Assembly (NCBI RefSeq): GCF_039654945.1
Contig: NW_027361696.1
Coordinates: 37,634,001-37,698,000 of the forward strand
Length of the DNA: 64,000 nt
Origin: Dendrobates tinctorius
Taxonomy: Eukaryota
Reading direction: 5' to 3'
Part shown: positions 14,601 to 64,000 of the stretch, piece after piece
Numbering within the stretch: position 1 is the first letter of the stretch
Layout: each line of letters starts with the position of its first letter
Translations under genes and position numbers: made by a program
The notes under the pieces: generated by a model
The model's database searches: none
What the model saw: only the letters and a program-made list of their open reading frames with translations
What the model was told of the DNA's origin: nothing

Positions 14601-14719
14601 TACAAGTCCCATCTGGCGATGCCTGCTACCATGACAGTGATTGACACATTAGCCAATGATGGGACAGTAGTAGTCCCATCATCCGGCTAATGTGTTAAAT
14701 GTTAAAAAAAAAAAAAAAA

Positions 14720-15800: not shown

Positions 15801-16409
15801 CATATAACATAGAGTAACATACTTACCAATACTTGTCACATTGTTCCCCGAAGCCATTGTCTTTTACGGAATAAATATTAACATAACAAACCACAAAAAT
15901 ACTCACCCACGATCCGAAGCAGTCCACGAGTGTGTCCCACGACGATCTTGGGTAGAGAACTGCAGCATCAGCTGTTGCTGCCGTTCTCTACGGGCTGCAG
16001 GAATCCAATGACGGAAGGTAGGTATCCTTCCGCACTGTATTCCTCCGCCACTTAAAAAAAAAAAAAGTCCCTAGTCTCACTGTATGCCATTGCTGTGTGG
16101 GAAATTCCCACGCAGCAATGGCATAAAGTGAGACTAGGGACTTTTTTTTTTAAGTGGCGGAGGAATACAGTGCAGAAGGATACCTACCTTCCGTCATTGG
16201 ATTCCTGCAGCCCGTAGAGAACGGCAGCAACAGCTGATGCTGCAGTTCTCTACCCAAGATCGTCGTGGGACACACTCGTGGACTGCTTCGGATCGTGGGT
16301 GAGTATTTTTGTGGTTTGTTATGTTAATATTTATTCCGTAAAAGACAATGGCTTCGGGGAACAATGTGACAAGTATTGGTAAGTATGTTACTCTATGTTA
16401 TATGTACTG

Positions 16410-17311: not shown

Positions 17312-18943
17312 TTTTTTTTTTTTTTTTTTTTTTTAACATTTAACACATTAGCCGGATGATGGGACTACTACTTTCCCATCATTGGCTAATGTGTCAATCA
17401 CTGTCATGGTAGCAGGCATCGCCAGATGGGACTTGTAGTCCCATCGGACGATGCTTGCACAGACCCCCGGACATCAGCACAGCCCCCCGGCAGGCCGGCA
17501 CAGCCCCCCGGCAGGCCGGCACAGCCCCCCACAGGGTGCACAGACCACCGGCAGGCCGGCACAGCCCCCCGGCAGGCCAGTACAGACCCCCACAGGGTGC
17601 ACAGACCACCGGCAGGCCGGCACAGCCCCCCGGCAGGCCGGTACAGACCCCCACAGGGTGCACAGACCACCGGCAGGCCGGCACAGCCCCCCGGCAGGCC
17701 GGTACAGACCCCGGGCAGTCCACACAGCCCCCCGGCAGGCCGGCAGAGACCCCCGGAAGGCCCGAAATGACGGCGCATCATGATGCGCACACACCGCGCA
17801 TCATGATGACGTCAGGCTGTCAATCAACTTTGAACTTCCGATTCCGATGCTGACTTCCGATATTGAAAAAATATCGGAAGTCGGTATCGGAATTCCGATA
17901 CAGCAAGTATCGGCCGATACCCGATACTTGCGGTATCGGAATGCTCAACACTAGTCACAAGTCATCAAACAAAGAAGAACTGCTTACATTTTTGTGCCAG
18001 AAGCACTATGAAAGACTGGTGATAAGCATGCCAAGACGCATGAAAGCTGTGATTAAAAATAATGGTTATTCCACAAAATATTGATTTCTGAACTCTTCCT
18101 GAGTTATAAGATTAGTATTATTGTTTATAAATGATTATGAACTTGTTTTCTTAGCATTATTTGAGGTCTGAAAGCAATGTTTTTTTATTTTGACCATTTT
18201 TCTTTGTCAGAAAAAAAAATATAACATTTTTTGCTTGGAAATTTGGAGACATGATGTCAGAAGTTTATAGACTAAAACACAATTTACATTTTACTCAAAA
18301 ATATACATATAAATAGAAAAATCTGACAAACTGAACATTTGAAAGCGGTCCCTTAATTTTTGTCAGAGCTGTATATTGGTTTTGCTTTTTTTTTATTTCT
18401 TTAACTAGCTAATTTTTTACTCATTAAAGTGGTACCGCCTTGGGATCGAATGTAACGTCTATCCCATCCTTTTAGATGAGTTCAGAGATTGTTGTGATTA
18501 AAACTATTTTTTCTTTTATGAATTAACTCCTCTTAAGAACCCTAAGGAAAAGGGGGAATCAATCAATGGTAAAAAAGTCATGTGCTTAACATACATATAA
18601 ATCCCATCTGTTACACTAAAAATCCCAACTTGTGTAAGAAGTAACCAAAAAATGCACAAATAGAAGATGTTTTTTCCAAATAAGTAGCAATTTTTATTAA
18701 AAATTTGTATGAAAACAAACGTTAAATATAAAACATCGTATCCTCAGATGTGACAGACACTATTGGCTACGGACACCTTTAAACACACCCTGCTGGTATA
18801 ATATTTCACAGTAGATTCATATACAATATTATATTTAATTAGTGATGAGCGAGTATATTCATTACTCGAGATTTCCTGAGCATGCTCAGGTGATCTCATA
18901 GTATTTGGATGTGCATAATGGCATACCAACATCATTTGACATA

Positions 18944-19489: not shown

Positions 19490-19534
19490 TAGTAACTCTT
19501 TACACATTATAGATTACAAAATGGGTCTGGCTAA

Positions 19535-19934
19535 AGGCCCTTTTACATTTAGCGATGCACCAGCGATCCGACCCGGTCAGGATCGCTGGTGCATCGCTAA
19601 ATGATCGCTAGTGAGCTGTCACACAGGCAGACCTCACAGTGATGCAGCAGTGACGCAGCGCACGATACTCACCTTTCACACACAGCGATCCTGGTGTCCT
19701 CCCGCCTGCCTCCAGCGTCTCTCGTCGTCAGCTTCCTGCTGAGGCTTCCTGCTGTGATGACAAGCGACGTAGAAATAGAGCCTGACATTTTCGCGCGATC
19801 AGCGATGGACAGGGGGGAGCCGGTCGGAGGTAAGTATCACACATAGCGATATCGCTAGCGATATCTCTATAAAGTCACAAAAACGGTGACGTTATAGCGA
19901 TATCGCTAGCGATATCGCTATGTGTAAAACCCCT
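19535..19934. mobile_element. PIF/Harbinger-type MITE
   Basis: TAA TSD, ends AGGCCCTTTTACA...TGTAAAACCCCT, internal AGCGAT/ATCGCT repeats. Confidence 0.8.
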
Positions 19935-22325: not shown

Positions 22326-23398
22326 ATGGAGAAATTATCAAGACCAGAATCTGTTTCTTCTAACTGTGCCACTGACATAGAGGAAACAGAAGTGATAGTA
22401 TCTGTACAAAACCCTCATACAACTGGGATGGAGGTTGCTGAATAATTGAGATGCTTCTGCACCGTGTTGAGAGGTCCAACCAAGATGCTAAATTGCTTTG
22501 GATTCTGGACCGGGAACTGGTCTTTCATGGTCAGGCTGAGAGAAGACCCGTCCTTTTCTGATGGTGGTCTCATGCATCTGCCAGAACGATGCACATTAGG
22601 AAACTCAGAAGCAATCATTACTTATTCGGACAAGTCAATGAGCGAGAATAGAAGGATGATGGTGGAATATATGGAGGACAACATAACACATCTCTATTGC
22701 AGCTGCCTTCTGCAAAGCAATGTTTTCAAGGACTATTCTAATGTCCTGAAAGAATTCCAAGACAGAAGAAATAAGAAGGCCAAGAAGCATCAGAGAAAGA
22801 GTAACAGGTAAGAGGACAAAGCACTCCACCATTCATTACCTGGATTTTCTAATATCATATATCTGTTCTTGGGACAATTGGGTATCGACCAACTTGATGC
22901 TGACATTAATTTATTGTAATTTTTGTTGCCATCTTCAAATCTTTTAATCTACTGCACAAAATATGAGCCAGTTTTAATTGGGATAAGTTTGGGACAGAAT
23001 ATATTTTATTTCTTTCATTATTATTGAGTCCAATGATATAAAAAATGGGGCCCTTTCTGAAAAAAATCTGATTTTTCAGGCATATTTTCTAAAAATAGTT
23101 ACATTTGACAGTTTTGTCTATTGTTGCATCTCATAGTGATGTAATATCTACATTTTGTCCTTATTTTCCCTCAGATAAAATAATGATTTCCTTGCTGATG
23201 GAGATGACAGAAGAAATGGTGCCATCTGAATTTGAAAACTAATTCTGGATCCGATTTCTATGAAGAGTGCCAATTTTTCCCAAAGCAACTTGTTTATGAA
23301 CACATCAGCATCGGGACTTAGTACCGACAGATGAAACTGTGGACACTTTAATCCTCTGTATATTTTGATCATTTTGTCAAATTTGTTGCTTCAATAAA
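22326..23398 (+). pseudogene. Paralog 1 of the short ZCCHC3/Tx1-ORF1-like gene (pseudogene)
   Basis: ATG 22326 (MEKLSRPESVSSNCAT..). Premature TAA at 22443, where paralog 2 has TAC. The frame continues to 22811 with an eroded knuckle. The TATA region is deleted. Predicted intron 22808-23174, AATAAA at 23393. Confidence 0.82.
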
Positions 23399-27416: not shown

Positions 27417-30180
27417 CTAAATCATCCCAGTCAGATGTCTGTCCAGCCTCTGTTTGAAGACTTCCATTGAAGGAGAACTCACCACTTCTCGTGGCAGCCT
27501 GTTCCACTCATTGATCACTCTAACTGTCAAAAAGTTTTTTCTAATATCTAATCTGTGTCTCCTCCCATTCAGTTTCATCCCATTGCTTCTAGTCTTTCCT
27601 TGTGCAAATGAGAATAAAGTTGATCCTTCTACAATGTGACAGCCCTTTAGATATTTGTAGACAGCTATTAAGTCTCCTCTCAGTCTTTTCTTTTGCAAAC
27701 TAAACATTCCCAAATCCTGCAACCTTTCCTCATAAGACAGGGTTTGCAGACCGGTCACCATTCTGGTCGCTCTTTTCTGAACTTGCTCCAGTTTGTTGAT
27801 GTCTTTTTTAAAATGTGGTGCACAAAACTGGACACAATATTCCAGATGAGGTCTGACCAAAGAGGAGTAGAGGGAAATAATGACTTCACGTGATCTAGAC
27901 TGTATGCTTCTGTTAATACATCCTAGAATTGCATTTGCCTTTTTTGCTGCTGCATCACACTGTTGACTCATATTCAGTCTGTGATCTATTAGTATACCCA
28001 AGTCTTTTTCACATGTGCTGTCACTTAGCCCTATTCCTCCCATTCTATATATGCTTTTTCCATTTTTATTGCCCAGATGTAGTACTTTGCATTTCTCCCT
28101 GTTAAAAACCATTCTGTTAGTTGCTGCCCACTTCTCCAGTTTATTTAAATCTTTTTGAATCCTCTCTCTCTCTTCTCTAGTATTAGCTATCCCTCCTAGC
28201 TTTGTGTCATCAGCAAATTTAATCAGTTTACCCTCAATTCCTTCATCTAAATCGTTGATAAAGATGTTGAACAATACAGGGCCCAGGACAGAGCCCTGTG
28301 GTACCCCACTTGAGACATTCTTCCAACTGGATGTGCAGCCATTTACGACCACTCTTTGGGTCCGATCACTAAGCCAGTTATGAATCCACCTAACAGTTGC
28401 CTTGTCCATTCCATACTTAGTCATTTTTTCAATAAGGATTGTATGAGAGACTTTGTCAAATGCTTTGCTGAAGTCAAGATATACTATATCTACAGCATTT
28501 CCTTGATCCAACCAATCAGTGATACCGTCATAGAAGGAAATTAAGTTAGTCTGACATGACTTATTAGTTACAAACCCATGCTGACTCTGTTTAATCACTT
28601 CATTCTTATCCAGGTATTGACATACATGTTGTTTAATAATTTGTTCAAAGATCTTTCCTGGTATAGAAGTCAGACTCACCGGCCTATAGTTGCCTGGGTC
28701 CACCTTCTTCCCCTTTTTGAAGATAGGAACAACATTTGCTCTTCTCCAGTCTTCTGGCACTTCTCCTGTTCTCCAAGAATTTTCAAAGATTATAGAGAGG
28801 GGTTCAAAAATTTCTTCTGCTATCTCCTTCAGTACTCTGGGGTGTAATTCATCTGGACCTGGAGACTTGAATTCATTTAGGCTAGCTAAGTGTTTCCTCA
28901 CTATCTTTCTGTTTATAGATATCCTGGATTCTTCTATTCCCTTAATAGGACAGTGAATAACAGTTGATGTTACATTTCCTTTCTGAGAGAAAACAGATGC
29001 AAAATAGGAATTTAAAAGTTCAGCCTTCTCAACATCCTGTCTTACCATTTCATCATTTTCATCCTGTAAAAATCCTATAGCATCTTTGACTTTTCTTTTA
29101 CTTTTGACATATCCCCAAAATCCTTTATTATTGCTTTTGACATCTCTTGCAAGCCTCAATTCATTTTCAGCTTTAGATAATCTGATTTGTGCCCTGCAGG
29201 TTCTGCAGACAGCATTATATTCTTCTTTAGATATGCCTCCCTCTTTCCATTTTATAAACATTTTTTTCTTCCTTTTTAGCATGTGCTTAAGTTCTGTGTT
29301 CATCCATCCTGGTTTCCTTAACTGCTTCCTATTCTTCCCTCTTTTCGGAATTGTTAACAACTGTGCTTTGAGAATTTCATTTTTCAAGATTTCCCATCCT
29401 TCCTGGACATTTTTGTCTTTAAGGATATCCAGCCATTGGATCCCTCCAATTCTCTTTCTGAATCCCTTAAAATCTGCCTTTCTGAAATCTAACCTTGACG
29501 TCTGAGTCTTCACAGGTCTTCCGCCTCTAGTTATCCAAAATTCTAAAATAGCATGGTCGCTACCTCCTAGGGTCCCAGCCACTTTTACCTCCTCAACCAT
29601 TTCCTCCCTGTTTATAAGGATTAGATCCAAGGTAGCAGTTCCCCTTGTTTTCTCCCTTACCTTTTGGAAGATAAAGTTGTCAGCAAGAGAGGATAAGAAT
29701 TTCCTTGACCTGTTAGTTTTGCCTGAGAGAGATTCCCAACAAAAGTCTGGATAGTTGAAATCTCCCATGACAACTATGTCATATTTTTTGGAGAACTTGG
29801 CCATTTGATGCATAAAGAGTTCATCCATAGCTTCAGCTTGCACAGGCGGCCTGTAGTAAATGCCTACAATGGTGTCCTTTCCATTGTTCTGTCCTTGTAT
29901 TCTTACCCAAACAGTTTCCACAGAACTCCCAGTCTCTGAAGCTTCAATCTCTGTGCAGATTTACGCGTTTCTAACATACAATGCGACACCCCCTCCTCGT
30001 TTATCAAGTCTGTTTCTTGCAAATAAGTTGTATCCTTCTAGTCTTGTATTCCAATCATGTGTATTGTCCCACCAAGTTTCAGTGATTCCAATGACATCAT
30101 ATTTCTTTTCCTGTGTTAGTAGTTCCAATTCTCCTTGTTTGTTGCCCATGCTTTGTGCATTAGTACAGAAACATTTTAGT
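27417..30180 (-). pseudogene. CR1 ORF2 (APE endonuclease + reverse transcriptase) with one frameshift near 29961
   Basis: GITETWW and GGGVALYV in 29961-30149; MGDFN, SDH, YLDFSKAFD, GVPQGSVLGP and FADD in 27417-29921. Confidence 0.92.
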
Positions 30181-30328
30181 TTGTGATTGGTTTCTCTTTC
30201 TCCAATATTTTTATTAATTAGATTCTTTCATCTTTGTTCTTCCTTTCCACTTCTAATAGCAGAGTTCTCAATAGCATTTGTCAGGTGTATGGCTTTTTCT
30301 GGTCTTTTGCTTCCCTTCCCATGTTGTT

Positions 30329-31252
30329 CTAGTTTAAACCTCTCCTTACAAGTGTAGCAAGGCGACTTCCAAATACATGCTTTCCAGTCTTAGTAAGGTG
30401 CACCCCATCTCTAGCAAGTAGTCCATCATATAAGTAGTTCACTCCGTGATCCAGAAATCCAAATCGTTGCTGACGGCACCATCGACGTAGCCAGTTGTTC
30501 ACCTGCAGAATCTTATTCCACCTCCTTGTTCCATGGCCATCCACTGGGAGGATGGAAGAGAAGACCACCTGCGCTCCCAGTTCTTTCACTTTCTTGCCTA
30601 AGTCTTCAAAGTCTCTGCAGATGGTTTCCAGGTCGTTTCTTGCAGTGTCATTTGTCCCCACATGTAGTAGCAGGAATGGGTAGTCATCTGTAGGTCTGAA
30701 GAGTCCTGATATCCTGTCAGACACATCTTTAATTTTTGCACCTGTAAGACAGCACATTTCTCTTGAAGTTATATCCGGTCTGCAGATAGCGGCCTCAGTT
30801 CCTCTCAGCAGGGAATCCCCCATGACCACCACTCTCCGTTTCTTCTTCACAACATTTTTCTTTCTCCATCCAGGAGGACTCTGAAGGCGTACAAGGTTGC
30901 TGCTTGTTGGCAAAGTCTTATTCTGATGTATTTCTTCATTGTTTTCCTGCGTGAGAGCCTGGTACTGGTTTCTGAGCAGTATGGGTGCTGACTGCCTCCT
31001 GATCCTCCTGCTTCTCTGGGTCACATGTCTCCATTCCTCTGTTTCTTCAGGTGCACTTTGAATTTCTTCTCTTTCTGTAACATGAAGAGATAATTCTGCT
31101 CTGTCCAAGAACTCTTCACCTTCCTTAATGATCTTCAACGTAGCTAACCTCTCTTCGAGATTTTGCAACTTTTCCTCCAACAGGGACACAAGCTTGCATT
31201 TGTGGCATGTGAAGTTTGGCTTTTCCACTGGTAAGTCTGTGAACATGTAGCA
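30329..31252 (-). CDS. CR1 ORF1 (Zn finger/coiled coil + SGNH esterase-like), slightly 5'-truncated
   Basis: CxxC, GDS, HVGTND and DGVH motifs. Confidence 0.9.
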   Translation of the reverse strand, partial: CYMFTDLPVEKPNFTCHKCKLVSLLEEKLQNLEERLATLKIIKEGEEFLDRAELSLHVTEREEIQSAPEETEEWRHVTQRSRRIRRQSAPILLRNQYQALTQENNEEIHQNKTLPTSSNLVRLQSPPGWRKKNVVKKKRRVVVMGDSLLRGTEAAICRPDITSREMCCLTGAKIKDVSDRISGLFRPTDDYPFLLLHVGTNDTARNDLETICRDFEDLGKKVKELGAQVVFSSILPVDGHGTRRWNKILQVNNWLRRWCRQQRFGFLDHGVNYLYDGLLARDGVHLTKTGKHVFGSRLATLVRRGLN

Positions 31253-32636
31253 AGAAATTGTCAAAACTCAGTAATGTCAGCGATTGTGAAGGAATAAATT
31301 GTTCTGATGAAGAAGCTTGACAGAAAAGCAGGTATTTAACTTTATATTGATATAACCTACAAATCGATACAGTCATAGAGAAAAACAACATGGAAAAGAG
31401 ACAGAAATCAAGCTAATTTTACCTTGAGGTGCATACAAGTGAGATTAATATGAAACACATCAAGTTCTCCAAAGAAACCCATCAATATGAAGAAAATATA
31501 ATCTTTATATCGCAACAAGCTCAGAACTCAGCTGAAATTGTTGGCTAGCCTTTTAATTAGACACCATGGCGGTACCCCTTTATTAAGAAAATTATCACAT
31601 ATTAACATTAAGATTTTTTTCATCAAAAACAAATATAATTACATTTTACAATATTTTGTTGGGAAATACTGCAATAAGTTCAGGTAGTGCATGTGCTGCA
31701 AACCTGGGCCGACCACCTTTCATAATCCCAAAGCTTGAAATGATTTAGTATGTCATTATCAAGAAGAATGATTACACCAGAGACCATAGAAAGATGTGTC
31801 CTTGATAAAACAATGGCAGTTATTAATTTTGATGTTTTAGGTCTTGCATCTTCTACCCAAGATTAATAAATATCTTCCTACCTATTTAATAAATGAATTA
31901 TATATATTACAATTCTGCACTCATGCAAATGAAAATTAGAAGATGTTAGAGAGTAATGACTGCACCAAACTGAGCAACTTTTTAACTATCCATTATAAAT
32001 TCCTGCATAACTTATTGTAATACGCTTTTTACTTATCTTACACATCTATGTTGATTTTCACCTATCAAAAATAAATATTAGCAATATCTCTTACAATATG
32101 ACACAAAGAGGCATGAAACACATCACATAATTAGTTCCCATTTGTATCAGACTATTACTTTTTTATATAAATGATAAAAATTATATTATACATATGAGAG
32201 AAAGAAAAATTTTAAAAATATTTATAATTCTAAATTTAAACAAAATTTATAATTTGTCCCCGTTTCCCTCTCCAGAAACCAGTCAGGTATTGGTTGAATA
32301 GTTTGCCCTGCACTTCTGTATGTAATTATGTAATTGACCTGATAGAATAATGCTCAAAACAAAAGAGACTCTGCAGAGATCACACTTGTCAAGAGCTTTG
32401 TAATTTCATGAGCAACTCAGCATGAGAAGAGACATGAACATCCCCAGGATCCACCCAAGCCAGCTGTAGACACAGAGCATTTCATATGTAGATGACAGGG
32501 TTAATTGTCTGAAAAATAAATGTATCTGAAGCGTGATGTGAAATATATTTAAATAGATGAAAGATCCCCATATGTATTATAATTATTTTTCCAACTCCCT
32601 GATATCATGAATATTATCAGTATCAATCTTTTATTA

Positions 32637-36437: not shown

Positions 36438-36947
36438 ATGGATGAATCGTCAAGACCAGAAACTATCTCCTCTAACTGTGCCACTAACATAGAGGAAATA
36501 AAAGTGATAATATCAGTACGAAACCCTCATACACCAAGGAAGGAGGTTGCTGAATACTTGAGACGCTTCTGCATCGTGTTGAAAGGTCCCACCAAGATCT
36601 TAAATAATTTAGGCTTCTGGACTGGAAACTGGTCTGTCATGGTCAGACTGAGACAAGACCAGTACTTACCTTTTGGTGGTCTCATGCATTTACCAGAAAG
36701 ATGCACAATAGGAGACTCAGAAGCAATAATTTCTTATTCAGACAACTCATTGAGTGAGCATAGAAGGATGACAATGGAATACAAGGAGGACAGCATGACA
36801 AATCTCTGCGGCAGCTGCGTTGTGCAAGACTATATTTTCAAGGACTATCCTGGTGATATCAAGGAAATCCAGGACAGGACATCTAAAGCCCCCGTTACAC
36901 ACAGCAAGATAGCTAGCAATATCGCTGAAACGTCACAGGTTTTGTGA
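36438..36947 (+). CDS. Paralog 2 of the short ZCCHC3/Tx1-ORF1-like gene; C-terminus replaced by MITE sequence (probably disabled)
   Basis: RNPHTP..EVAEYLRRFCIVLKGPTKI.N.LGFWTGNWSVMVRLR..GGLMHLP. Native end at 37247-37280, predicted intron 37277-37642, AATAAA at 37808. Confidence 0.78.
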   Translation: MDESSRPETISSNCATNIEEIKVIISVRNPHTPRKEVAEYLRRFCIVLKGPTKILNNLGFWTGNWSVMVRLRQDQYLPFGGLMHLPERCTIGDSEAIISYSDNSLSEHRRMTMEYKEDSMTNLCGSCVVQDYIFKDYPGDIKEIQDRTSKAPVTHSKIASNIAETSQVL

Positions 36948-37243
36948 CGCAGCAGCGATATTGCTAGCGATATCGCTATGTCTGATACTTACCTGTGACC
37001 GGCCCCCCCGCTGGTTATCGCTGATCGCGCAAGAACGTCCTGGGCGCCGACAAGTGGCGCGTGGATGCGGGCGGGATGACGTCAGGATCGCCGCGTTTGA
37101 CAGGTAAGTAGCGACCCCCGATCGCTGCTATGTTGCTGTTGAGATCTGCCTGTGTGGCAGCTCACAAGCGACCACTTAGCGATGCACCAGCGATCCATAT
37201 CATTGTCTGGATCGCTGGTGCATGGCTTAGTGTAACGGTACCC
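36887..37243. mobile_element. Harbinger-type MITE inserted in the paralog 2 coding region
   Basis: TAA TSD at 36884 and 37244. Removing it restores TSKKAKKQKKSKR*. Confidence 0.9.
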
Positions 37244-38004
37244 TAAGAAAGCCAAGAAGCAGAAGAAGAGTAAAAGGTAAGAGGACAATGTCCTCCACCA
37301 TTCATTGCAAGGATCTCCAGATATCATGTATCTGTTCCTGAGTCAACTATGTAACAATGCACTTGATGTTAAACTTTTATATATTTTGAGTTTTCTTGGA
37401 AGCTACAATCCTTATAATCCACTGTGCACAATATAATGACTCAGAACTGATCTGTATGAGCTTGGGGATGAACATATCTTGTTACAATCACTTATATTGT
37501 GAGCCATCAGATCTAAAACTGGGCAATTTCAAAAAAATCAAGGCTGTCCAGAACATTTTACAAAATTATATATTTCATAATATTTTGCCTTTTGCTGCAT
37601 TTCATAGTAGTGTAATATGTACATTTCTTTTTTGTTCTACAGATAAATTATTTTTTTGCTGGTGGAGATAGCAGAAGGATCGGTGACTCCTAATTTGAGC
37701 CCCATATAATTCTGGATCCAGTTACTAAAGATTTCTTCCCATTTTGATGACACTGACGATACTTGGATCTTTGGGTATTTTCATTATTTTGTGACATTTG
37801 TTATTTCAATAAAACTTTAATTTCAAATAAAAATATGTCTTCCTTATGTCATGTGTCATCTTCATATTCTTCAAAAAGGTACGTTGTAATCATTGTTGGT
37901 CTGGTTCCTCTAAGCCTATCTGTTTTTTAAGTTATGATTGACTTTGGGTACAATGACTGGGGTGCTGAGACTTCAAGGTCATTATGTGCCTAAAGCTCCC
38001 ATCT

Positions 38005-41836: not shown

Positions 41837-42743
41837 GGCTGTGTGCCCACGATGCGATTTTTAAGCGTTTTGCCACGATTTTTGGCGCGAAAATGCTGCG
41901 AAAACGTTTAAAAATTGTGTACAGAACGCCCCCCATGCATTCCTATGGCATTCCGCACATGCTGTGCTAATGCTGCGCTTTTTTCCGCGGCGGAAACGCA
42001 TCTCGGAAAAAATCGCAGCATGCTCATTCTTTTGTGCGGAATCGCAAAGAATTGCCGCGATTCCGCATCCATAGGAATGCATGAGAATCGCTTACTTCCC
42101 GCATGTGGCTATGCCCACTATGCGGGAAGTTAAGCGTCTCATGTGCGGTTGGTACCCACGGTGTGGAGGAGAGGAGACTGTCCTCCAGGCCCTGGGTACT
42201 ATACCCCTGTAAAAAAAAGAATAAAAAATAAAAAATCGGGGTATATTTACCTTCCGACGTCCCGCGCTGCATTCCTGGCCTAAGCGTTCCCAGTAATGCC
42301 TTGCGGCAAGGTCCTGTGATGACGTAGTCTCGCGTGACTCTAGCGGTCTCGCGAGATCACTATAGTAACATGAGAACAACATCATCACAGGTCTCGCAAG
42401 GCATTATTGGGAACGCTGAGGCCCGGGATGGCAGCGCGGGACATCGGAAGGTAAATATACCCCGATTTTTTATTTTTTTATCATTTTTAACATTTTATCT
42501 TTTACTATTGAGGCCGCATAGGCGGCCTCAATAGTAAAAAGCTGCTCACACTTGTCAAACACTATGTTTGACGAGTGTGACCAACCCGTCAATCACTTTC
42601 CAAGCGATGCTTCAAATCGCTTGGAAAGTGCTTGAGAAAATCGCGGCAAAATCGCGAACAGAATCGCGGTAAAATTGCGGTGATTTCTGGGAAGGAGTCC
42701 GGTTTTCACTGTGCGTTTTAAAATGCTACGTGGGCACATAGCC
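41837..42743. mobile_element. Harbinger-type MITE with internal foldback
   Basis: TAA flanks, ends GGCTGTGTGCCCAC...GTGGGCACATAGCC. Confidence 0.78.
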
Positions 42744-42746
42744 TAA

Positions 42747-43152
42747 AGGGGTTTTTCACATAGCGATATCGCTAGCAATATCGCTAAAGCATCACCGATT
42801 TTGTGACGCAGCAGCGATATTGCTAGCGATATCGCTATGTGTGATACTTACCTCTGACCGGCTCCCCCGCTGTCTGTCGCTGATCATGCGAGATCGTGCA
42901 GCTCCATTTCTCATCGGGCGCTTCCCGCTGGACTTCCTGCTGGCACCGACGAGCGGCTCGTGGACGCGGGCGGGAGGACGTCAGGATCGCCGCGTCTGAA
43001 AGGTAAGTAGCGACCGCTGCTGCGTCGCTATGTCGCTTTGAGATCTGCCTGTGTGGCAGCTCACTAGCAACCATTTAGCGATGCACCAGCGATCCTCACC
43101 GGGTCATATCGTGGTCAGGATCGCTGGTGCATTGCTAAATGTAAAGGGGGCT
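42747..43152. mobile_element. Harbinger-type MITE abutting the previous one
   Basis: Shares the TAA at 42744-42746; same family as 19535-19934 and 59351-59755. Confidence 0.8.
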
Positions 43153-44927
43153 TTAGGGTATTTTATCGCTGGATGAATTGGTTAATCAACACAGGAATAG
43201 ACATTATTAAGTGTGATAGATTTACAGATAAGTAGGTACAAAATAAATAAAAGGATTTACATTGATATCCAGAAGGAAATCAGAAGGAAATCAGAAGGAA
43301 ATCATCATTGTTAGGTAAAAATTTTGTAAAGCATATAACACGTAACACATTTGTTTAGTTTGGTGAAATCATAACTGTTTTTAATACCTATAATCCAAGG
43401 TTCAGTTGTAATTTTCAACTATATGAGTGTACAAATTTTAGGTGATGGATTAAACAGATAGGTAGGTCAATAGATGAGGATTTTGGGTAGAAGATACTCA
43501 AAAATAATAGACAAATGATAGGATCAACAGCTAGATAGATATGGTTGCTTGGGACAAGATACAAGACCTGAGACATTAAACAATCCACCCACCAGATCAT
43601 CATATTTGGTCCTGGATGGGGTCCATATTTTCCAGTATAGCCATTTACCTGAATTAGATCCTACATGTATTTTCAAATAATATATTCTCCATTATTATAC
43701 CTTTTACTAGAGTTGAGCAACTTTTGGTTTTTTAGGGTCGCGTTTCGTTTCGTGAAACCCGACTTTTCCAAAAGTCGGGTCGAGCAAGATCGTCCGATTA
43801 TAGGGAAAAGTCGGGGTCGTCCCGAAACACGAAACCCAATGTAAGTCAATGGGGAATAAAAGTCGGCAGTGAGAGGAGGACAGGAAACACACCTACAGTG
43901 CCCATTTGAATGCCAAAAGCATCAATTCTTCTTACTTAAGCTTGTCAACCTTAATTAACTTCATAATACAAGTTACGCACTGAAAAATGGGGGTTATTTG
44001 GCTAAAGTTGTGGGGGGGTAGGGCTGGCTCCAGGTTTTCATGTGCTCTGGGTGAAAGAGCGCCCCTTTAACACATACCACAACTCATCATGCTCCGATAC
44101 GGCAGAGAAATAGCGGTATAGTACAATGAAAAATACCACACTTTTTACATCTCATGACGAGGCCCATTTATTTCTCCATACAGTATCATTGGTCCCATAT
44201 AATGTTTGAAACAGTATATGATGAGGTCCATCCCCATGGATGAAGCTCCACTGTCTTATGGGCCCAAATAATGCTCCACATAATGGGCCCCATTTCTAAT
44301 GCTCTAGTGTATAATGGGCCCTGTAAATGCTGCTCCAGTGTCTGATGTCCACCTTTGGAATGTTCCAGTGTATGGTGGGCACCATCTATCATTCTCCAGA
44401 GTATAGTGCTCCCCAAAAATTGCTGTCCCAACATTGAAAACAATCAAATAAGTCTCCTCACTAGGGAATCCCTGTACTTGTCTGGACTCCTCGTCGTCCC
44501 CATCTTCCATCTCACTGCACAGTATTTCAACTTTGCAAGTGCTGTGATCCTGAGCAAGCGGGGGGGGCCCACTCATTGGCGACGGCACTGGCACAGGGCC
44601 CCTGATAGTACGGTGGTGTGTCTGATGGCGGGTGGGCCGAACCTGCACTTTCATCTGCAGCTTCCTCTTTGTCACCGTGTAAGATGGAACTGTATATGGG
44701 AAGGGTAACCTGAGTTTCATCAGGGTCAGATTCAGGCCGTGTAGCGTGTAGGGGAATGTAGTGGTCTGGGTCAATGTACCAGCAGATTCATCGAGCAGTG
44801 GCTGGGCATCAGTGCACTTGTGTCGCCCCCAGGAGTATGGTTGCCACAGTGGCATTACTTTCTTCCTAGGGAGTGTGATGTCATGCTTGGGAGCAACGAA
44901 CGATCTCTCTAGCAGGTTAACTGATTG

Positions 44928-53400: not shown

Positions 53401-53796
53401 GAGAGCTATTTCCTATTCAAGAGAATGGGTCTGTGCACATGTCAGTGTGTTTCCGCGGATGGTGTGTTCATGGGCAACACACGCTGACATGTCCATTTTA
53501 TAATGTTAGCATATGCCACAAAACATCCAGCACACGTTCATACACATAACATATATGGATATCATCCATGTGACACGCATCGATGCTGGGAAGAAGAGTT
53601 ACAGTAAGCACTGATCCCCGGCGTCGGGTGCTGAACTTTGCTCTCATCATTGTCCCCAGCTTCTGCCGATTGCTGGCAGAGCAGGGGAGAATGATGAAAA
53701 CCATGTTCAGCACCCAGCGCTGGGGAAAGGCTTCTTCCCTGGCACCCATCCTTGTGGTAGGGATGCAGCACATGCATGCCAGACGTGTGCCACAAG

Positions 53797-56051
53797 TAGA
53801 GTTGAGCGATACCGTCCGATACTTCAAAGTATCGGATCGGAATGGATCGGCCGATCTTAAAAAAAAGTATCGGTATCGCCGATTCCGATACCGGAAGTCC
53901 CATTCAAGTCTATGGGACTTCCGGTATCGGAATAAGAAAAACCCTGTTTTTGCCTTGTACAGCCTCTCTGGGTCTGTACGGGCCTTTCGGGGGGCTGTGC
54001 CGGCCTGCCAGGGGGTCTGTGCAGGCTCCGGTGGTCTGTGCCGGCCTGCCGGGGGGCTGTGCCGGCCTGCCGGGGGGGCTGTGCAGGCTCCGGGGGGCTG
54101 TGCCGGCCTGCCGGGGGGCTGTGCCGGCCTGCCAGTGGTCTGTGCAGTCTCCGGTGGGCTGTGCCGGCCTGCCGGGGGGCTGTGCCGGCCTGCCGGTGGT
54201 CTGTGCAGGCTCCGGTGGGCTGTGCCGGCCTGCCGGGGGGCTGTGCCGACCTGCCGGGGGTCTGTGCAGGCTTCGGGGGTCTGTGCAGGCATCGTCCGAT
54301 GGGACTACAAGTCCCATCGGGCGATGCCTGCTACCATGACAGTGATTGACACATTAGCCAATGATGGGACAGTAGTAGTCCCATCATCCGGCTAATGTGT
54401 TGAATGTAAAAAAATTACATGCTACATTCATACTACATACTACATACATGCTACATTCATACTACATATATACTACATGCAACATACATACTACATATAT
54501 ACTACATGCATGCAACATGCATACTACATATATACTACATGCAACATACATACTACATATATACTACATGCATGCAACATGCATACTACATATATACTAC
54601 ATGCTACATACATACTACACATATGCTACATATATACTACATGCATGCTACATACATACTGCATGCTACATACATACTGCATGCTACATACATACTACAT
54701 GCTACATACATACTACATATATGCTACATACATACTACATATATACTACATGCATGCTACATACATACTGCATGCTACATACATACTACATGCTACATAC
54801 ATACCACATATATACTACATACATACTACATGCATGCTACATGCTACATACATACCACATACATACTACATACATACTACATACATACTACATGCATGCT
54901 ACATACATACTACATGCTACATACATACTACATATATACTACATGCATGCTACATACATACTACATGCTACATACATGCTACATACATACTACATGCTAC
55001 ATACATACCACATACATACTACATATATACTACATGCATGCTACATACATACTGCATGCTACATGCATGCTACATACATACTACATACATACTACATGCT
55101 ACATACATACCACATATATACTACATACATACTACATACAATACATTCATACAATACATACATAGACATACAGTACATATAACATAGAGTAACATACTTA
55201 CCAATACTTGTCACATTGTTCCCCGAAGCCATTGTCTTTTACGGAATAAATATTAACATAACAAACCACAAAAATACTCACCCACGATCCGAAGCAGTCC
55301 ACGAGTGTGTCCCACGACGATCTTGGGTAGAGAACTGCAGCATCAGCTGATGCTGCCGTTCTCTACGGGCTGCAGGAATCCAATGACGGAAGGTAGGTAT
55401 CCTTCCGCATTGTATTCCTCCGCCACTTAAAAAAAAAAAAGTCCCTAGTCTCACTTTATGCCATTGCTGTGTGGGAATTTCCAACGCATGTATGTAGTAT
55501 TTTTTTTTTTTTTAACATTTAACACATTAGCCGGATGATGGGACTACTACTGTCCCATCATTGGCTAATGTGTCAATCACTGTCATGGTAGCAGGCATCG
55601 CCAGATGGGACTTATAGTCCCATCGGACGATGCTTGCACAGACACCCGGACATCAGCACAGCCCCCCGGCAGGCCGGCACAGCCCCCCGGCAGGCCGGTA
55701 CAGACCCCCACAGGGTGCACAGACCACCGGCAGGCCGGCACAGCCCCCCGGCAGGCCGGTACAGACCCCGGGCAGTCCACACAGCCCCCCGGCAGGCCGG
55801 TACAGACCCCGGGCAGTCCACACAGCCCCCCGGCAGGCCGGCAGAGACCCCCGGAAGGCCCAAAATGACGGCGCATCATGATGCGCACACACCGCGCATC
55901 ATGATGACGTCAGGCTGTCAATCAACTTTGAACTTCCGATTCCGATGCCGACTTCCGATATTGAAAAAATATCGGAAGTCGGTATCGGAATTCCGATACA
56001 GCAAGTATCGGCCGATACCCGATACTTGCGGTATCGGAATGCTCAACACTA
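53797..56051. mobile_element. Second copy of the palindromic non-autonomous hAT element, inner right arm deleted
   Basis: Same TIRs, TSD GCCACAAG on both sides. Jumps from the centre (~55487) to the end of the right microsatellite. Confidence 0.93.
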
Positions 56052-56929
56052 GCCACAAGTATTATCAGGGCTTTTTTAGTAAAAAAATATTTTGCCTGTA
56101 CGCATTTCTGATTAATTTCTCACTATTTCAAAAACTTTTAATCCCCACTAATATATCACATTTGGGAAACAACCATGATATCGCAAGTTGTTCTGGATCT
56201 ATAATTGACCACCATTACCCACAGCAGCCAGACAGTTCTGGCAGCTACAGCTGAAGGCAAGGGTTATGAATGCAGGAAGTGGTGTGCTGCCACTTAGAGG
56301 TTTATATATCAAGAGAACTCCTTTTTTGTAAGTCTGAGATTCCAGAGTAGAAGTCACTGTTATAAAGCAGTTTTCATTATGGCACATATATAGGGTCTGA
56401 AGCCTGTGCCACTTTCTATGACATTAAAATACCTCAGTACGTGTAGCGCCAGCATCTCAGCACGTTTCTTCCCTCCACTGGCAGGGACACTGACTCAGTC
56501 ACCGCCACAGCCCCCATCCTGCTATTCCTTCCCTGCCGACTGTTGCCCGGGGTCTCTACACAGCTCGCAGATTCTTACCCTCCGCCACCGCTGCCAGTCC
56601 CTGCTTCTTCCTGCTTTCACCGGCGTCATGTGACAGGCGCAGCAGCAATGACGTCATTGCTGCTGCGCCGGTCATAGCCAGGTACAAGCAGGAAGAAGCA
56701 GGGACTGGAGGGCAGCAGCGGTGACAGAGCGAATGAGGGTAAGAATGAATGCTTTATTATTTTAAGGTGTACAGCAGCACCTTCAGATTTCCGGTACGCC
56801 GTACTGGTGCGTACCGGTGCAAAAAAAGCTCTGAGTAGTATACACACGGACACTGACATCTCTGGTACCGGAATTATGAGGACGTGTGAAAGAGGTGTTA
56901 TACTGGGTTTTATGTTTAGCTGCTGTCAC

Positions 56930-59350: not shown

Positions 59351-59755
59351 AGGGGGTTTTACACTAAGCAATATCGCTAGCAATATCGCTAAAACGTCAC
59401 TGGTTTTGTGACGTTATAGCGATATTGCTAGCGATATCGCTATGTGTGATACTTACCAGCGACCGGCTCCCCCGCTGCTCATCGCTGATCGCGCGAGAAT
59501 GTCCGGCTCCATTTCTCGTCGGGCGCTTCCTGCTGGGCTTCCTGCTGTGACGACGAGCGACGCGTGGACGCGGGCGGGAGGACGCAGGATCGCTGTGTGT
59601 GAATGGTAAGTATCGTGCGCTGCGTCGCTGCTGCATCGCTGTGAGATCTTTCTGTATGAAAGCTCACTAGCGATCATTTAGCGATGCACCAGCGATCCTG
59701 ACCGGGTCGGATCGCTGGTTGGATCGCTGGTGCATCGCTAAATGTAAAAGGGCCT
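59351..59755. mobile_element. Harbinger-type MITE
   Basis: TTA TSD; empty paralogous site at ~4818 (ACCTTAGCC). Confidence 0.85.
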
Positions 59756-60673: not shown

Positions 60674-61499
60674 AGGTACTGTCACACTTAGCGATGTACC
60701 AGCGATCCCGACCAGCGATATGACGCGGTCAGGATCGCTGGTACATCGCTAAGTGGTCGCTAGTGAGCTGCCACATAGGCAGATCTCACTAGCGACATCG
60801 CTGGGGACGGGGATCGCTACTTACCTGTCACACCAGGCGATCCTGCGTCCTCCCGCCCGGCTCCACGCGTCGCTCATCCTCACAGCAGGAAGCGCCACAG
60901 GAAGCAGACGACGAGAAACAGTCCTGAACGTTCTTGCGCGATCAGCGATAACCAGCGGGGGAGCCGGTCGTAGGTAAGTATCAGACACAGAGATATCGCT
61001 AGCAATATCGCTATAACGTCACTAGTTATAGCGATATTGCTAGCAATATCTCTTAGTGTGACATGCCCTTTAGGCTGGAGTCACACATAGCGACTCACCA
61101 GCGATCCTGACAACGATATCAATGTGTCAGGATCACTGGTGAATCGCTATGTGATCGCTGGTGAGCTGTCAAACAGACGGCTTCACCAGCGATCAGCACA
61201 GCAGCGCCGAGCGCCCGGCGTCGCTGTGCACGTTAGTAACCAGCGCGCTGATGCAGGAAGCTGGTAACTAATGTACACATCGGGTATCTAAGGGACGTAT
61301 GCCCCTTGCATACCCGATGTGTATGTTAGTTACCAGCTGATCACTGGTCTCCCGCCTGTCACACGCAGCGATGCGTGCTGGCCAGCGGGAGACCAGCGAC
61401 CAAAAAATAGTCCTGGCCTTTCCTGCAGCGATCAGCGATACCAGCAGGGGGGCCGGTCGCTGATCGCTGTCACACACAGCACTATGTGTGATGGGGCCT
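60674..61499. mobile_element. Two abutting Harbinger-type MITEs (60674-61069 and 61073-61499)
   Basis: TAA/TTA trinucleotides at 60671, 61070 and 61500, with GTCACAC/GTGTGAC-type TIRs. Confidence 0.78.
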
Positions 61500-62819
61500 T
61501 TAGTGAACTGAACACAAAGGGTATTTATATGTAGATGAATGGGTTTATCACCACAAGAATAGAGATAAAGTCTGATAAATTTAAAATTTATGGCTAGTAT
61601 GGCTAATATGTTTTAGATATAAATGTATTTATTTGTGACAATAAGTAAAATTCCTGCTTTTATATCAAGCTTACTGACAGTGATAATCGCTTGCTTTGCA
61701 GTAACGGCCATTACTGAGCTATTAAAACTTTTTTTTATCCTTTTAGCAAGTTATTTTGATGGAAGATAATCATTAGCAGTGAGCAGTGGATCGTTTGTTT
61801 CTACAAAGTTTTATTCAATTGGTTTTTTTATATCTACTCAAAATGATCATATATTTTTGCCAAGGAAGAGTCAGGACAACATCGTTAACATAATATGGTG
61901 ACCAAATTTATTGGGTTTGGACAAGGATTATGTAAAATTTATGGGAACCTTTCTTCTATCTATTTTGTATCTATTTCATATCTATCACACTTCCTATAGG
62001 AATATTCCTGAGTAAATATGTAATGCCCTATGTATACAGTCACATTGGGTGGATCCAGGTTGTTTGCTTGGCTCTTCTCATGCTGACTAACTACAGGATT
62101 TGGAAGGTTCTGGAAAGGTGTAACTTCTGCCGAGTCCATTGTGTCTCAGGGCCAATTCTATGAGGTCAGTTGGATAATAATAAAAGTTGCCTCCATTATT
62201 ATTCACGTGAACTAATAGATTTATCCCAGAGCAATACACCTAAAGCCTGACTGGTTTACGGAAAGAGCAAGGAAGACAAATTTATTTGATCTGGCTCTTA
62301 AATTATAAATACATGACAGACAAAAATGATGTTATTTTCTGTATCTCTCTTCTTCCCTCTGATTTACAGATTTTTTGGTTGTTTTTGACAATTGATTGAA
62401 ATAAATCAAATTGTCATTATTCTATTGAAAATATTGAAGATATTGGAAATGATTCATTATTTTATAGATATATCTGTACACTTTTATAATGGAAACATTA
62501 ATGAATAAAACGCCTAAATTCAGATGAACAATAGAGAGAAATCCAAATGAATTATATTTCAGATATACACAAGTAGATGACAACTTAGTAAATAGTTAGC
62601 AGGAAAGTGAAATCTGATAATTAATAAAAGATAGGTGACAGATAAATACATAAAAATATATCTAGCCATATGACTATGTAGAGAGATTTGGAGGGAAGCT
62701 CCTTACTTAGATGTTTTCTTTGGTCTTCACCTACTGAACAGACTTGTATTATGTAAATAAGATTAACACCTAAGATGATGGAAACAATGGCAGGAAAAGC
62801 CCTCCCCTTCCCAGTCTGA

Positions 62820-62853
62820 TATAAAGGAGGGTCTTCTCTCTACCCTCATACAT
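62820..62853 (+). promoter_or_regulatory. TATA box and initiator of paralog 3
   Basis: TATAAA at 62820 and CTCATAC 28 bp downstream; conserved with paralog 2. Confidence 0.72.
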
Positions 62854-62923
62854 TCTCCTAATGAACATCTTCCTGGATTCTTCTACTTCATATCCTGCAG
62901 CTACAATCAGAAGAAATAAGATA

Positions 62924-63803
62924 ATGGAGAAGTCTACAACACCTGAATCCCTTTCCACCAACTGCCCAGCTAATACTGATGAAATTGAAATAATTGTAAC
63001 CATGCGAAACCCACAAACACCAGAGAAGGAGATTGCTGAAGACCTAGGAAAGCGCTGCACTGTTTTGAAAGGTCCCACCAAGGTCTTCAATACTTTTGGA
63101 CTTTGGACTGGGAATTGGTCTTTCCTGGTCAGACTGAGAAAAGATGATTCCTCATTTGATGGACTTTGGCATCTACCAGACAGATGCACATTGGGAAACT
63201 CAGAAGCCATAATTTCTAACATGGCTGATTTATTAGAGGACGAGAATCGCAAGAAAAAATATGAACCTTTCTGCTACAGCTGCTTAATGGAAGGCCATGA
63301 ATTTGGGGACTGTCCTGACGATCTGGAAGACCTGGTGATTAGAGAAGCCAAGAAGCTTCTAAAGAAGATGAGTAAAAGGTAAGAGGACAATACACGCCAC
63401 AATCCATCACTAGGGTCTTCACACCTTGCATACATCTGTTTTTGGGACAATTGGGTGACAATCATCTTGATGTCAGACTTTTATTTATTGTGATTTTTGT
63501 AGCAAGCTTGAAAACTTAGAATCTACTGCACACAATATGAACCAGGATTAACCAGGATGAGTTTGGGGCAGAATATATCTTATTACTTTCAATACTATTG
63601 AGACCAATAATATCTAAAATGAGACCATTTCCAAAAACTTGGTGTTTTCCTGTGTATTTTACAAAAATAGGTACATTTGACAATGTTTTGCCTATTGTTT
63701 AATTTCATTGTGGTGTAATATTTACATTTTATCCTTATCTTCCCACAGAAAAAATAAAAAGATCCTTGCTGGTGGAGATGACAGAAGAACTGGTGGCAAC
63801 TGA
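62924..63803 (+). CDS. Paralog 3, apparently intact short ZCCHC3/Tx1-ORF1-like protein with one CCHC knuckle. Exon 1 62924-63378, predicted exon 2 63749-63803; unspliced stop at 63382
   Basis: IIVTMRNPQTPEKEIAEDLGKRCTVLKGPTKV.NTFGLWTGNWSFLVRLR..DGLWHLP..LG, then CYSCLMEGHEFGDC (CX2CX4HX4C). AG|GTAAGA donor and pyrimidine-tract CAG acceptor. An in-frame upstream ATG exists at 62861. Confidence 0.82.
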
Positions 63804-63969
63804 ATTTTGAAAACTAATTCTGCATCCGATCTGTATTTAGAGTCTCTGCCAGTTTTACCTAAAGCAACAAGATTGAACAAATCGGCAGCTGGACTTTGTG
63901 CTGTGGAATGAAACCGAAGACACTTTAATCCTTTGTATATTTTGATAATTTTGTAAAATGTATTACTTC

Positions 63970-63975
63970 AATAAA
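63970..63975 (+). terminator. Polyadenylation signal of paralog 3
   Basis: TTCAATAAAAC context is conserved at 23393 and 37808. Confidence 0.7.
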
Positions 63976-64000
63976 ACAAATTTAATCCAAAACTATTTCT

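What the first reader, a model, noticed from the sequence alone, without database searches (positions are those of the whole stretch)
63377..63803. Conserved intron splits the last codon, and paralog 3 gains a new tail by losing the exon-2 stop
Seen: the ORF stop AGG TAA GA overlaps a strong donor AG|GTAAGA in all three paralogs. 366-370 bp later each has a pyrimidine tract ending in CAG (23174, 37642, 63748). In paralogs 1 and 2, splicing gives AG|A TAA, the same Arg-stop as the unspliced form. In paralog 3 the codon is AAA, adding KNKKILAGGDDRRTGGN*. Inference: an intron in a retro-derived gene argues for domestication, and intron retention would switch the C-terminus of paralog 3.
Basis: partly seen in the sequence, partly recalled or inferred. 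Interest (0 to 1): 0.72.

Follow-up and report, generated by a model that had tools for sequence, protein, structure and literature searches.

The report
Putative stop-overlapping intron, ORF1-derived gene
A small frog gene family derived from a jumping-gene protein ends its reading frame on a well-conserved splice-donor signal, so splicing would add 17 amino acids in one branch of the family, but no RNA data could be found to show that splicing happens.

Summary
The sequence observation is correct. In all three window paralogs the stop (AGG TAA) lies inside a consensus donor (A/C)AG|GTAAGA. A pyrimidine tract ending in CAG follows 366-370 nt later. Joining them gives AG|A TAA in paralogs 1 and 2, and AG|A AAA plus 17 codons in paralogs of type 3.

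I examined 63 copies genome-wide, in two clusters on one contig plus one unplaced contig.
- GT is kept in 62 of 63. The single loss is in a truncated pseudogene.
- A YAG acceptor is seen in 62.
- Intron positions +2..+12 are the longest unchanged run in the whole non-coding alignment (P about 1e-3 for that pre-specified place).
- TAA after the acceptor is ancestral (three lineages). AAA is derived, and 22 of the 23 copies that carry it keep the tail frame open.

The gene descends from LINE ORF1: 39% identity to the ORF1 of an element with an endonuclease/reverse-transcriptase ORF2. It was copied as DNA. It has a conserved TATA box, and 43 of 63 reading frames are intact.

Splicing itself is untested. 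No RNA run holds the locus and no contig showed a joint. Two of the three window paralogs are pseudogenes.

Verdict: a plausible real 3'-terminal intron (about 0.55), and an ordinary kind of feature.

The parts
62820..62825 (+). TATAAA box of paralog 3, inside the block CTGATATAAAG conserved across the lineages
   Evidence: It lies about 100 nt upstream of the conserved ATG. A contig of run X16 begins at 62844, which is only a weak hint of a transcript start.
62924..63382 (+). Coding sequence of paralog 3 from the conserved ATG (152 aa plus stop TAA at 63380-63382). It holds the ZCCHC3-type second RNA-binding domain and one CX2CX4HX4C zinc knuckle.
   Evidence: Pfam PF23058, E 5e-16. The start is conserved in all lineages. 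The Kozak context is gataATGg.
62861..62923 (+). In-frame upstream extension of the mechanical ORF, probably 5' UTR rather than coding
   Evidence: The ATG is missing in the paralog-4 lineage and followed by a TAG in the 95%-identical copies. Its Kozak context is poor.
63376..63390 (+). Putative 5' splice site AAG|GTAAGAGGACAA overlapping the last codon (AGG) and the stop (TAA)
   Evidence: GT is kept in 62 of 63 copies and GTAAGA in 61 of 63. Positions +2..+12 form the longest zero-change run of the alignment.
63379..63748 (+). Putative phase-2 GT-AG intron of paralog 3 (370 nt)
   Evidence: Lengths are 359-372 nt in copies without insertions. Insertions of about 100, 335 and 710 bp sit inside it in L005, L024 and L025.
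63704..63748 (+). Candidate branch-point zone (GTGTAATATTTACATTTT), pyrimidine tract and CAG acceptor
   Evidence: The tract is at least 76% pyrimidine over -20..-4 in every copy, and CAG is invariant. The branch zone shows 0.40 changes per site against 0.68 in the intron interior.
63749..63803 (+). Start of the putative terminal exon. Its first base completes the Arg codon, then come 17 codons (KNKKILAGGDDRRTGGN) and TGA.
   Evidence: The frame is open in 22 of 23 paralog-3 and paralog-4 copies; one copy (L022) has a 1-nt insertion.
63749..63995 (+). Putative terminal exon (3' UTR) with AATAAA at 63970-63975
   Evidence: AATAAA lies 218-221 nt after the acceptor in the paralog-1, -3 and -4 lineages and 165-166 nt after it in paralog 2.
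22808..23174 (+). Homologous putative intron of paralog 1 (367 nt). Splicing would give AG|A TAA.
   Evidence: This window copy is a pseudogene: the promoter/start segment is deleted and the frame is open only from 22446.
37277..37642 (+). Homologous putative intron of paralog 2 (366 nt). Splicing would give AG|A TAA.
   Evidence: The coding frame already ends at 36947 because of the repeat insertion.
36889..37243 (+). Insertion of a dispersed repeat, about 355 bp, in the coding sequence of paralog 2. Boundaries are approximate.
   Evidence: Alignment gap. The same repeat occurs elsewhere in the window. An intact relative without it is L025.

Best explanation
Paralog 3 is an intact member of a family of small host genes derived from a LINE ORF1 protein. 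The family has about 63 copies and was amplified at the DNA level.

Each gene has a TATA promoter and one exon holding the whole reading frame: the ZCCHC3-type second RNA-binding domain, a single zinc knuckle that is retained or lost, and a basic C-terminus. A real U2-type GT-AG intron of about 370 nt follows, then a terminal exon of about 245 nt with the poly(A) signal.

The intron is phase 2 and its donor contains the stop, so unspliced RNA ends at ...SKR. In the ancestral state, splicing rebuilds Arg-stop (AG|A TAA) and the protein is the same either way. In the common ancestor of the paralog-3 and paralog-4 3' regions, a T-to-A change removed that exon-2 stop. Spliced mRNA of those 23 copies would therefore encode 17 extra residues.

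Shown: the sequence anatomy, its conservation, the direction of the change and the origin of the gene.

Inferred: that transcripts exist, that they are spliced at these sites, and that the tail is made.
For: - Geometry and frames are as stated.
- The donor matches the vertebrate consensus at 8 of 9 positions (the consensus is from established knowledge). The acceptor has a long pyrimidine tract, and a YTNAY-type branch candidate (TTTAC) lies about 24 nt upstream.
- Across 63 copies in five lineages (pairwise non-coding divergence up to K of about 0.44), GT is kept in 62. The only GT loss (L064) is in a truncated pseudogene. The YAG acceptor is seen in 62.
- In a 56-copy alignment the longest zero-change run of about 590 columns is TAAGAGGACAA at intron +2..+12. 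The chance for 11-12 pre-specified sites is about 1e-3.
- The branch zone shows 0.40 changes per site against 0.68 in the intron interior, and tract changes keep the pyrimidine content.
- Large insertions are tolerated inside the interval in L005, L024 and L025.
- The terminal exon ends with a conserved AATAAA.
- It behaves like a gene: TATA box conserved, 43 of 63 frames intact, and dN/dS of 0.25-0.5 in the RNA-binding half.
- The tail frame is open in 22 of 23 copies, with 3 synonymous changes against 1 non-synonymous.
Against: - No RNA evidence of any kind. No listed run holding the stretch is on record as RNA. Laid contigs gave no joints, and the one run covering the intron also covers the promoter and flanks, so it behaves as DNA.
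- No matching protein or gene call is on record.
- Consensus donors are common in this window.
- Intron and exon 2 are no better conserved than the 300 bp beyond the poly(A) site, so most of the similarity is shared descent.
- The conservation statistic has low power (0.67 changes per site). A zero-run of 12 or more somewhere arises in 13% of shuffles.
- No spliced retrocopy exists in the genome. All protein matches of 47% identity or more, and all intron/exon-2 DNA matches, lie in the clusters.
- One tail copy is frameshifted (L022).
Confidence: 0.55

Rival explanations
1. There is no intron. The gene is a single-exon unit with a collinear 3' UTR of about 620 nt. The GTAAGA at the stop and the pyrimidine-CAG downstream arose by chance in the founder copy and persist because the copies are young DNA duplicates. 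The conserved GGTAAGAGGACAA block is then a 3' UTR or stop-context element. The 17-residue tail is never made.
For: - No junction evidence.
- The paralogs share homology far beyond the transcript.
- The intron is as diverged as the untranscribed flank.
- Consensus donors occur 11 times in the window, several of them in repeats.
- The parent ORF1 and ZCCHC3-type genes are typically intronless (established knowledge; not tested here).
Against: - The donor is the single most conserved non-coding stretch in 56 copies, and the one GT loss is in a pseudogene.
- A donor matching consensus at 8 of 9 positions, with a strong acceptor 370 nt away in a short two-exon layout, is the kind of pair the spliceosome normally uses (inference from established knowledge).
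- The pyrimidine tract and CAG are kept through lineages with K of about 0.4.
Confidence: 0.28
2. The family is not expressed as protein-coding mRNA at all. It would be a silent or decaying amplicon, or a source of non-coding or small RNA, so the question of splicing and of the tail does not arise.
For: - No RNA run and no protein record were found.
- 20 of 63 copies are broken.
- dN/dS is near 1 in the C-terminal half between paralogs 3 and 4.
Against: - 43 frames of 152-161 codons stay open across lineages with dS up to about 1.
- dN/dS is 0.25-0.5 in the RNA-binding half.
- The TATA box and a good-Kozak ATG are conserved.
- Contigs about 90% alike over the coding region occur in three small runs from other organism labels. 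Their kind is unknown.
Confidence: 0.1
3. The donor is real but pairs mainly with a different acceptor, either a further exon downstream or an acceptor in a neighbouring unit. The CAG at 63748 would then not be the partner, and the C-terminal outcome would differ from the one proposed.
For: The donor is more strongly conserved than the acceptor region. The units lie in dense tandem arrays, so read-through splicing is conceivable.
Against: A conserved AATAAA lies 165-221 nt after the proposed acceptor in four lineages. The acceptor CAG and tract are kept in all copies examined. No other conserved exon-like block was seen in the 500 bp beyond.
Confidence: 0.07

Closest known systems
Phase-2 spliceosomal introns whose donor (AG|GTAAG) reads as an in-frame TAA when retained, including 3'-terminal introns that switch a protein's C-terminus by retention versus splicing
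   Same: A consensus GT-AG pair, a stop created by the donor itself, and a last exon that carries only a few codons plus the 3' UTR and poly(A) signal. Because the new stop lies in the last exon, neither form should be an NMD target (inference from the 50-55 nt rule, established knowledge).
   Different: Removal of the intron has not been observed here. In most of the family both forms encode the same protein, so the 'switch' exists only in the 23 copies that lost the exon-2 TAA.
ZCCHC3 (vertebrate host gene; Pfam PF23057 + PF23058 + CCHC knuckles). It is reported as a zinc-knuckle protein that restricts LINE-1 (PMC10351740, PMC9580041).
   Same: It shares the second RNA-binding domain (PF23058, E 5e-16 to 7e-19) and a CX2CX4HX4C knuckle in the paralog-3, paralog-4 and L024 lineages.
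   Different: It is only 152-161 aa and has no first RNA-binding domain. It has one knuckle or none instead of three, about 63 tandem copies, and a putative intron. It is closer to a resident LINE ORF1 (39% identity) than to anything in the protein database.
LINE ORF1 proteins with RNA-binding domains plus CCHC knuckles (locus L033 in the same genome: ORF1 followed by an endonuclease/reverse-transcriptase ORF2)
   Same: It aligns over the second RNA-binding domain and the first knuckles, E 4e-29.
   Different: No ORF2 follows. Copies are not dispersed. Homology between copies extends about 460 bp upstream and about 500 bp past the poly(A) signal, so they spread as genomic DNA and not by retrotransposition.
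L1TD1, a host gene domesticated from L1 ORF1p (PMC11925450)
   Same: A host gene derived from the ORF1 of a LINE, with an RNA-binding function retained.
   Different: It descends from a different ORF1 type (L1 coiled-coil/RRM/CTD type against the knuckle type here). L1TD1 is single-copy in mammals, whereas this is a lineage-restricted tandem family.

Membership tests
U2-type GT-AG spliceosomal intron | 5' splice site close to MAG|GTRAGT | tested here: met
   AAG|GTAAGA or CAG|GTAAGA, 8 of 9 consensus positions. It is present in 61 of 63 copies.
U2-type GT-AG spliceosomal intron | Polypyrimidine tract followed by YAG | tested here: met
   The tract is 76-88% pyrimidine over -20..-4, and CAG is found in every copy where the region could be located (62 of 63).
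U2-type GT-AG spliceosomal intron | Branch point 18-40 nt upstream of the acceptor | tested here: inconclusive
   A YTNAY match (TTTAC) lies about 24 nt upstream, in a block that is better conserved than the intron interior.
U2-type GT-AG spliceosomal intron | Removal from RNA (exon-exon junction in transcripts) | not testable with these tools
   No listed run holding the stretch is on record as RNA. The one read-laying run gave no joints, and the only run covering the intron behaves as DNA.
U2-type GT-AG spliceosomal intron | Splice signals conserved above the local neutral background | tested here: met
   The donor at +2..+12 is the longest zero-change run (11 nt) in 56 copies, with P of about 1e-3 for that pre-specified place. 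The power is modest.
ZCCHC3 family (orthologue-level membership) | First and second RNA-binding domains plus three CCHC knuckles | tested here: not met
   Only PF23058 is found. There is one knuckle in paralog 3 (weak Pfam hit, motif intact) and none in paralogs 1 and 2.
Active or dead LINE copy (ORF1 of a retroelement) | ORF2 downstream, dispersed copies, and homology ending at a poly(A) tail | tested here: not met
   There is no ORF2. All copies lie in two clusters and one unplaced contig. Homology runs about 500 bp past AATAAA.
Domesticated transposon-derived host gene | Reading frame maintained under purifying selection after loss of mobility | tested here: met
   43 of 63 frames are intact. 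dN/dS is 0.25-0.5 in the RNA-binding half at dS up to about 1.
Domesticated transposon-derived host gene | Expression from a host-type promoter, and orthologues in other species | tested here: inconclusive
   The TATA box and a good-Kozak ATG are conserved. Coding contigs about 90% alike occur in runs of three other organism labels, but their kind (RNA or DNA) is unknown.

The most novel reading that the evidence does not exclude
A lineage-restricted family of about 63 tandem copies of miniature LINE-ORF1-derived RNA-binding genes acquired a stop-overlapping terminal intron. In one young sub-branch (23 copies), loss of the exon-2 stop turned regulated intron retention into a switch between two C-termini. 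That end of the protein is also where the paralog-3 and paralog-4 types are most diverged: the last 160 nt of coding sequence differ by about 26%, against about 1.5% in the adjacent intron. This may reflect an ongoing conflict, for example with the parent retroelement.
Probability: 0.15. Interest if true: 0.6.

Novelty: new member of a known kind. Interest (0 to 1): 0.35.

Why it matters
If the intron is real, it is a clean small example of how a gene born from a retroelement protein picks up host gene architecture. It would also show how one base change after an acceptor can create a new protein end with no cost to the old one.

The practical value is for annotation. Gene finders will probably either miss these 152-161-codon genes or call them as single-exon ORFs. 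The 23 paralog-3 and paralog-4 copies would then be given the wrong C-terminus.

The kind of feature (a terminal GT-AG intron, with a donor that doubles as a stop) is well known, so this is ordinary unless RNA data show regulated use. The surrounding family is the more interesting object: about 63 copies, mosaic divergence and a fast-changing C-terminal half.

Tried and rejected
- RNA evidence. Two run searches found no run on record as RNA that holds the stretch. The single read-laying run used X17, X16, X15 and X1 at 85% likeness and gave no joints. X1 covers promoter, intron and flanks alike, so it is DNA-like. X15-X17 each gave one contig of about 230 nt over 62844-63166 only.
- Protein database. 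Word searches with the 173-aa ORF and with the first 100 residues found nothing. Exact look-ups of four family proteins found no gene call.
- Spliced retrocopies as indirect proof of splicing. None were found. Every protein match of 47% identity or more, and every intron/exon-2 DNA match, lies within the clusters.
- A foreign origin of the intron and exon 2 from another host gene. No match was found outside the family.
- Region-wide constraint as evidence. I rejected this because intron, exon 2 and the flank beyond the poly(A) site diverge alike. The coding and 3' parts also give different relationships (paralog 1 is nearer paralog 2 in the coding sequence but nearer paralog 3 in the intron), which indicates exchange between paralogs.
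- The bacterial promoter/terminator scan is irrelevant for a vertebrate gene, and I ignored it.
- The idea that the 95%-identical copies are pseudogenes because of '1 TAG'. I rejected this because the TAG lies upstream of the conserved ATG.

Full report
**1. What is there**

The window is G000:C28:37634001-37698000 of a 6.36-Gb genome. An earlier follow-up note of this scan calls it a poison frog; I did not check that.

- Paralog 3: ...AAA AG|GTAAGAGG at 63378/63379 and ...cttatcttcccacag|AAAAAATAAAAAG at 63748/63749, an intron of 370 nt.
- Paralog 1: 22807/22808 and 23174/23175, 367 nt.
- Paralog 2: 37276/37277 and 37642/37643, 366 nt.

Unspliced, all three read AGG TAA. Spliced, paralogs 1 and 2 read AGA TAA. 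Spliced paralog 3 reads AGA followed by KNKKILAGGDDRRTGGN and TGA at 63801-63803. An AATAAA lies at 63970-63975.

**2. What the gene is**

All three proteins hit Pfam PF23058, the second RNA-binding domain of ZCCHC3 (E 5e-16 to 7e-19). Paralog 3 also keeps a CX2CX4HX4C knuckle.

The nearest relatives found in the same genome are LINE ORF1 proteins. Locus L033 has an ORF1 with both ZCCHC3-type RNA-binding domains and CCHC knuckles. It is followed by an ORF2 with endonuclease and reverse-transcriptase domains. Paralog 3 aligns to that ORF1 at 39% identity, E 4e-29. So 'retro-derived' holds.

The copies did not spread by retrotransposition.
- Homology between paralogs starts about 460 bp upstream of the ATG and runs about 500 bp beyond the poly(A) signal.
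- No ORF2 follows.
- Every protein match of 47% identity or more lies in C28 37.58-37.93 Mb, C28 46.28-47.29 Mb (opposite orientation) or the unplaced contig C412.
- The intron and exon-2 DNA occurs nowhere else.

**3. Gene model**

A block CTGATATAAAG (TATAAA at 62820-62825) is conserved across lineages.

The conserved start is the ATG at 62924, in context gataATGg. The mechanical ORF start at 62861 is lost in the paralog-4 lineage and followed by a TAG in the 95%-identical copies. The product is therefore 152 aa in paralog 3, 155 aa in paralog 4, 156 aa in L024 and 161 aa in paralogs 1 and 2.

**4. Census**

I examined 63 copies in five lineages:

| Lineage | Copies |
|---|---|
| paralog 3 | 15 |
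| paralog 4 | 8 |
| L024 | 1 |
| paralog 1 | 22 |
| paralog 2 | 17 |

- 43 copies keep an intact frame from the conserved ATG.
- In this window only paralog 3 is intact.
- Paralog 1 lacks the promoter/start segment and is open only from 22446.
- Paralog 2 carries a dispersed repeat of about 355 bp in its coding sequence (about 36889-37243) that ends the frame at 36947.
- Intact versions of both types exist elsewhere, for example L031 and L025.
- dN/dS between lineages is 0.25-0.5 in the RNA-binding half and 0.5-1.2 in the C-terminal half.

**5. Are the splice signals more than inherited letters?**

- GT is kept in 62 of 63 copies and GTAAGA in 61.
- The single GT loss (L064, GT to TT) is in a truncated, broken copy.
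- The single +6 change (L025, A to C) leaves GT intact.
- The YAG acceptor was located in 58 copies automatically and in four more by eye: L024 behind a 335-bp insertion, and L061-L063. It was not found in L045 within the stretch fetched.

I aligned the 56 copies without large insertions and counted parsimony changes per column on their own tree.
- The overall mean is 0.67 changes per site.
- Donor +1..+6 has 0.17, and +7..+13 has 0.29.
- The branch zone -40..-21 has 0.40, against 0.68 in the intron interior.
- The longest zero-change run of the roughly 590 columns is TAAGAGGACAA at +2..+12. The next longest run is 8 nt.
- With 54% of non-coding sites unchanged, 12 pre-specified sites are all unchanged with P of about 6e-4. 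A run of 12 or more somewhere arises in 13% of shuffles.
- The pyrimidine tract does change (0.85 per site) but stays 76-88% pyrimidine in every copy.

Against this:
- The intron as a whole is no better conserved than the 300 bp past the poly(A) site. For paralog 3 against paralog 1, K is 0.24 in the intron, 0.18 in exon 2 and 0.24 in the flank.
- Consensus donors are not rare. There are 11 MAGGTAAGW in the window, several of them in repeats.

**6. Direction of the exon-2 change**

ATAA follows the acceptor in paralog 1, paralog 2 and L024. AAAA occurs only in paralogs 3 and 4, whose 3' regions differ by about 2%.

The tail frame is open in 22 of 23 such copies; L022 has a 1-nt insertion. The substitutions seen in it are three synonymous and one Ile-to-Phe. 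That is too few to show selection.

**7. RNA**

- No listed run holding the stretch is on record as RNA.
- X1 covers the promoter, intron and flanks evenly, so it is DNA-like.
- X15, X16 and X17 are small runs from other organism labels. Each gave one contig of about 230 nt over 62844-63166, about 90% alike.
- The X16 contig begins 24 nt after the TATA box. That is compatible with a transcript start but proves nothing, since contigs cannot show ends and the kind of run is unknown.
- Protein word searches and exact look-ups were blank.

**8. Reading**

The anatomy is a TATA box, one coding exon, a strong donor, a short interval, a strong acceptor and a terminal exon of about 245 nt with AATAAA. 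Together with the excess conservation of the donor, this makes a real terminal intron the best single explanation. I put it at about 0.55.

The collinear-UTR rival stays at about 0.28, because nothing shows removal of the interval.

If the intron is spliced, the stop lies in the last exon in both forms, so neither should be an NMD target. The broken paralog-2 copies are an exception: their stop 329 nt upstream of the junction would make them targets (inference from established rules).

The proposed 'switch' of C-terminus applies only to the paralog-3 and paralog-4 copies and is hypothetical.

**9. Side observation**

Paralogs 3 and 4 are a sharp mosaic.
- From the TATA box through the RNA-binding half, they differ by about 6%.
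- In the last 160 nt of the coding sequence they differ by about 26% (dN 0.23, dS 0.21).
- From the first base of the intron onward they differ by about 1.5%.

Two readings remain open. One is exchange between paralogs with a breakpoint at the coding end. The other is rapid change of the C-terminal region. The raised dS favours a different history for the segment, while the boundary at the donor is striking.

Noticed in passing
window 62760-64000 against L017 (G000:C28:37583355-37586873): Paralog-3 and paralog-4 types are a three-level mosaic. They differ by about 6% from the TATA box through the RNA-binding half, by about 26% in the last 160 nt of coding sequence, and by about 1.5% from the first intron base onward. 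The switch falls within a few bases of the donor. Paralog exchange or fast C-terminal evolution could each explain it; this is not resolved.
   Followed up: partly
G000:C28 37.58-37.93 Mb (+), 46.28-47.29 Mb (-) and contig C412: The family forms two large arrays in opposite orientation about 9 Mb apart, built from repeated units of about 90-135 kb that each hold several paralog types. Some units are 100% identical over the gene (L001, L002, L003), which points to very recent segmental duplication or assembly-level redundancy.
   Followed up: partly
window 36889-37243, also about 19531-19925, 42740-43156, 59359-59747 and 60675-61073: A dispersed repeat of about 400 bp interrupts the coding sequence of paralog 2 and of most paralog-2-type copies genome-wide. 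It carries consensus splice donors (CAGGTAAGT) on both strands, at 36987(-) and 37101(+).
   Followed up: no
L033 (G000:C65:1155300-1160300), and L036: LINE copies that look intact. ORF1 has both ZCCHC3-type RNA-binding domains plus CCHC knuckles, and ORF2 has endonuclease and reverse-transcriptase domains. Many further copies with long open frames were listed on C65 and C574.
   Followed up: partly
L025 (intron), L015 (coding end), L061-L063 (exon 2): Insertions ending in (ATGATTCT)n / (ATAGAATC)n, the tail repeat of the CR1-type LINE also present at window 27417-31264. They hit the intron, the coding end and exon 2 of different copies, so this element was active after the family expanded.
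   Followed up: no
window 14100-17850 and 53500-56250: Long low-complexity arrays giving artefactual ORFs (HTYYI... and PAGRHSPP... repeats) in inverted pairs. They also occur just past the window end, after paralog 3.
   Followed up: no
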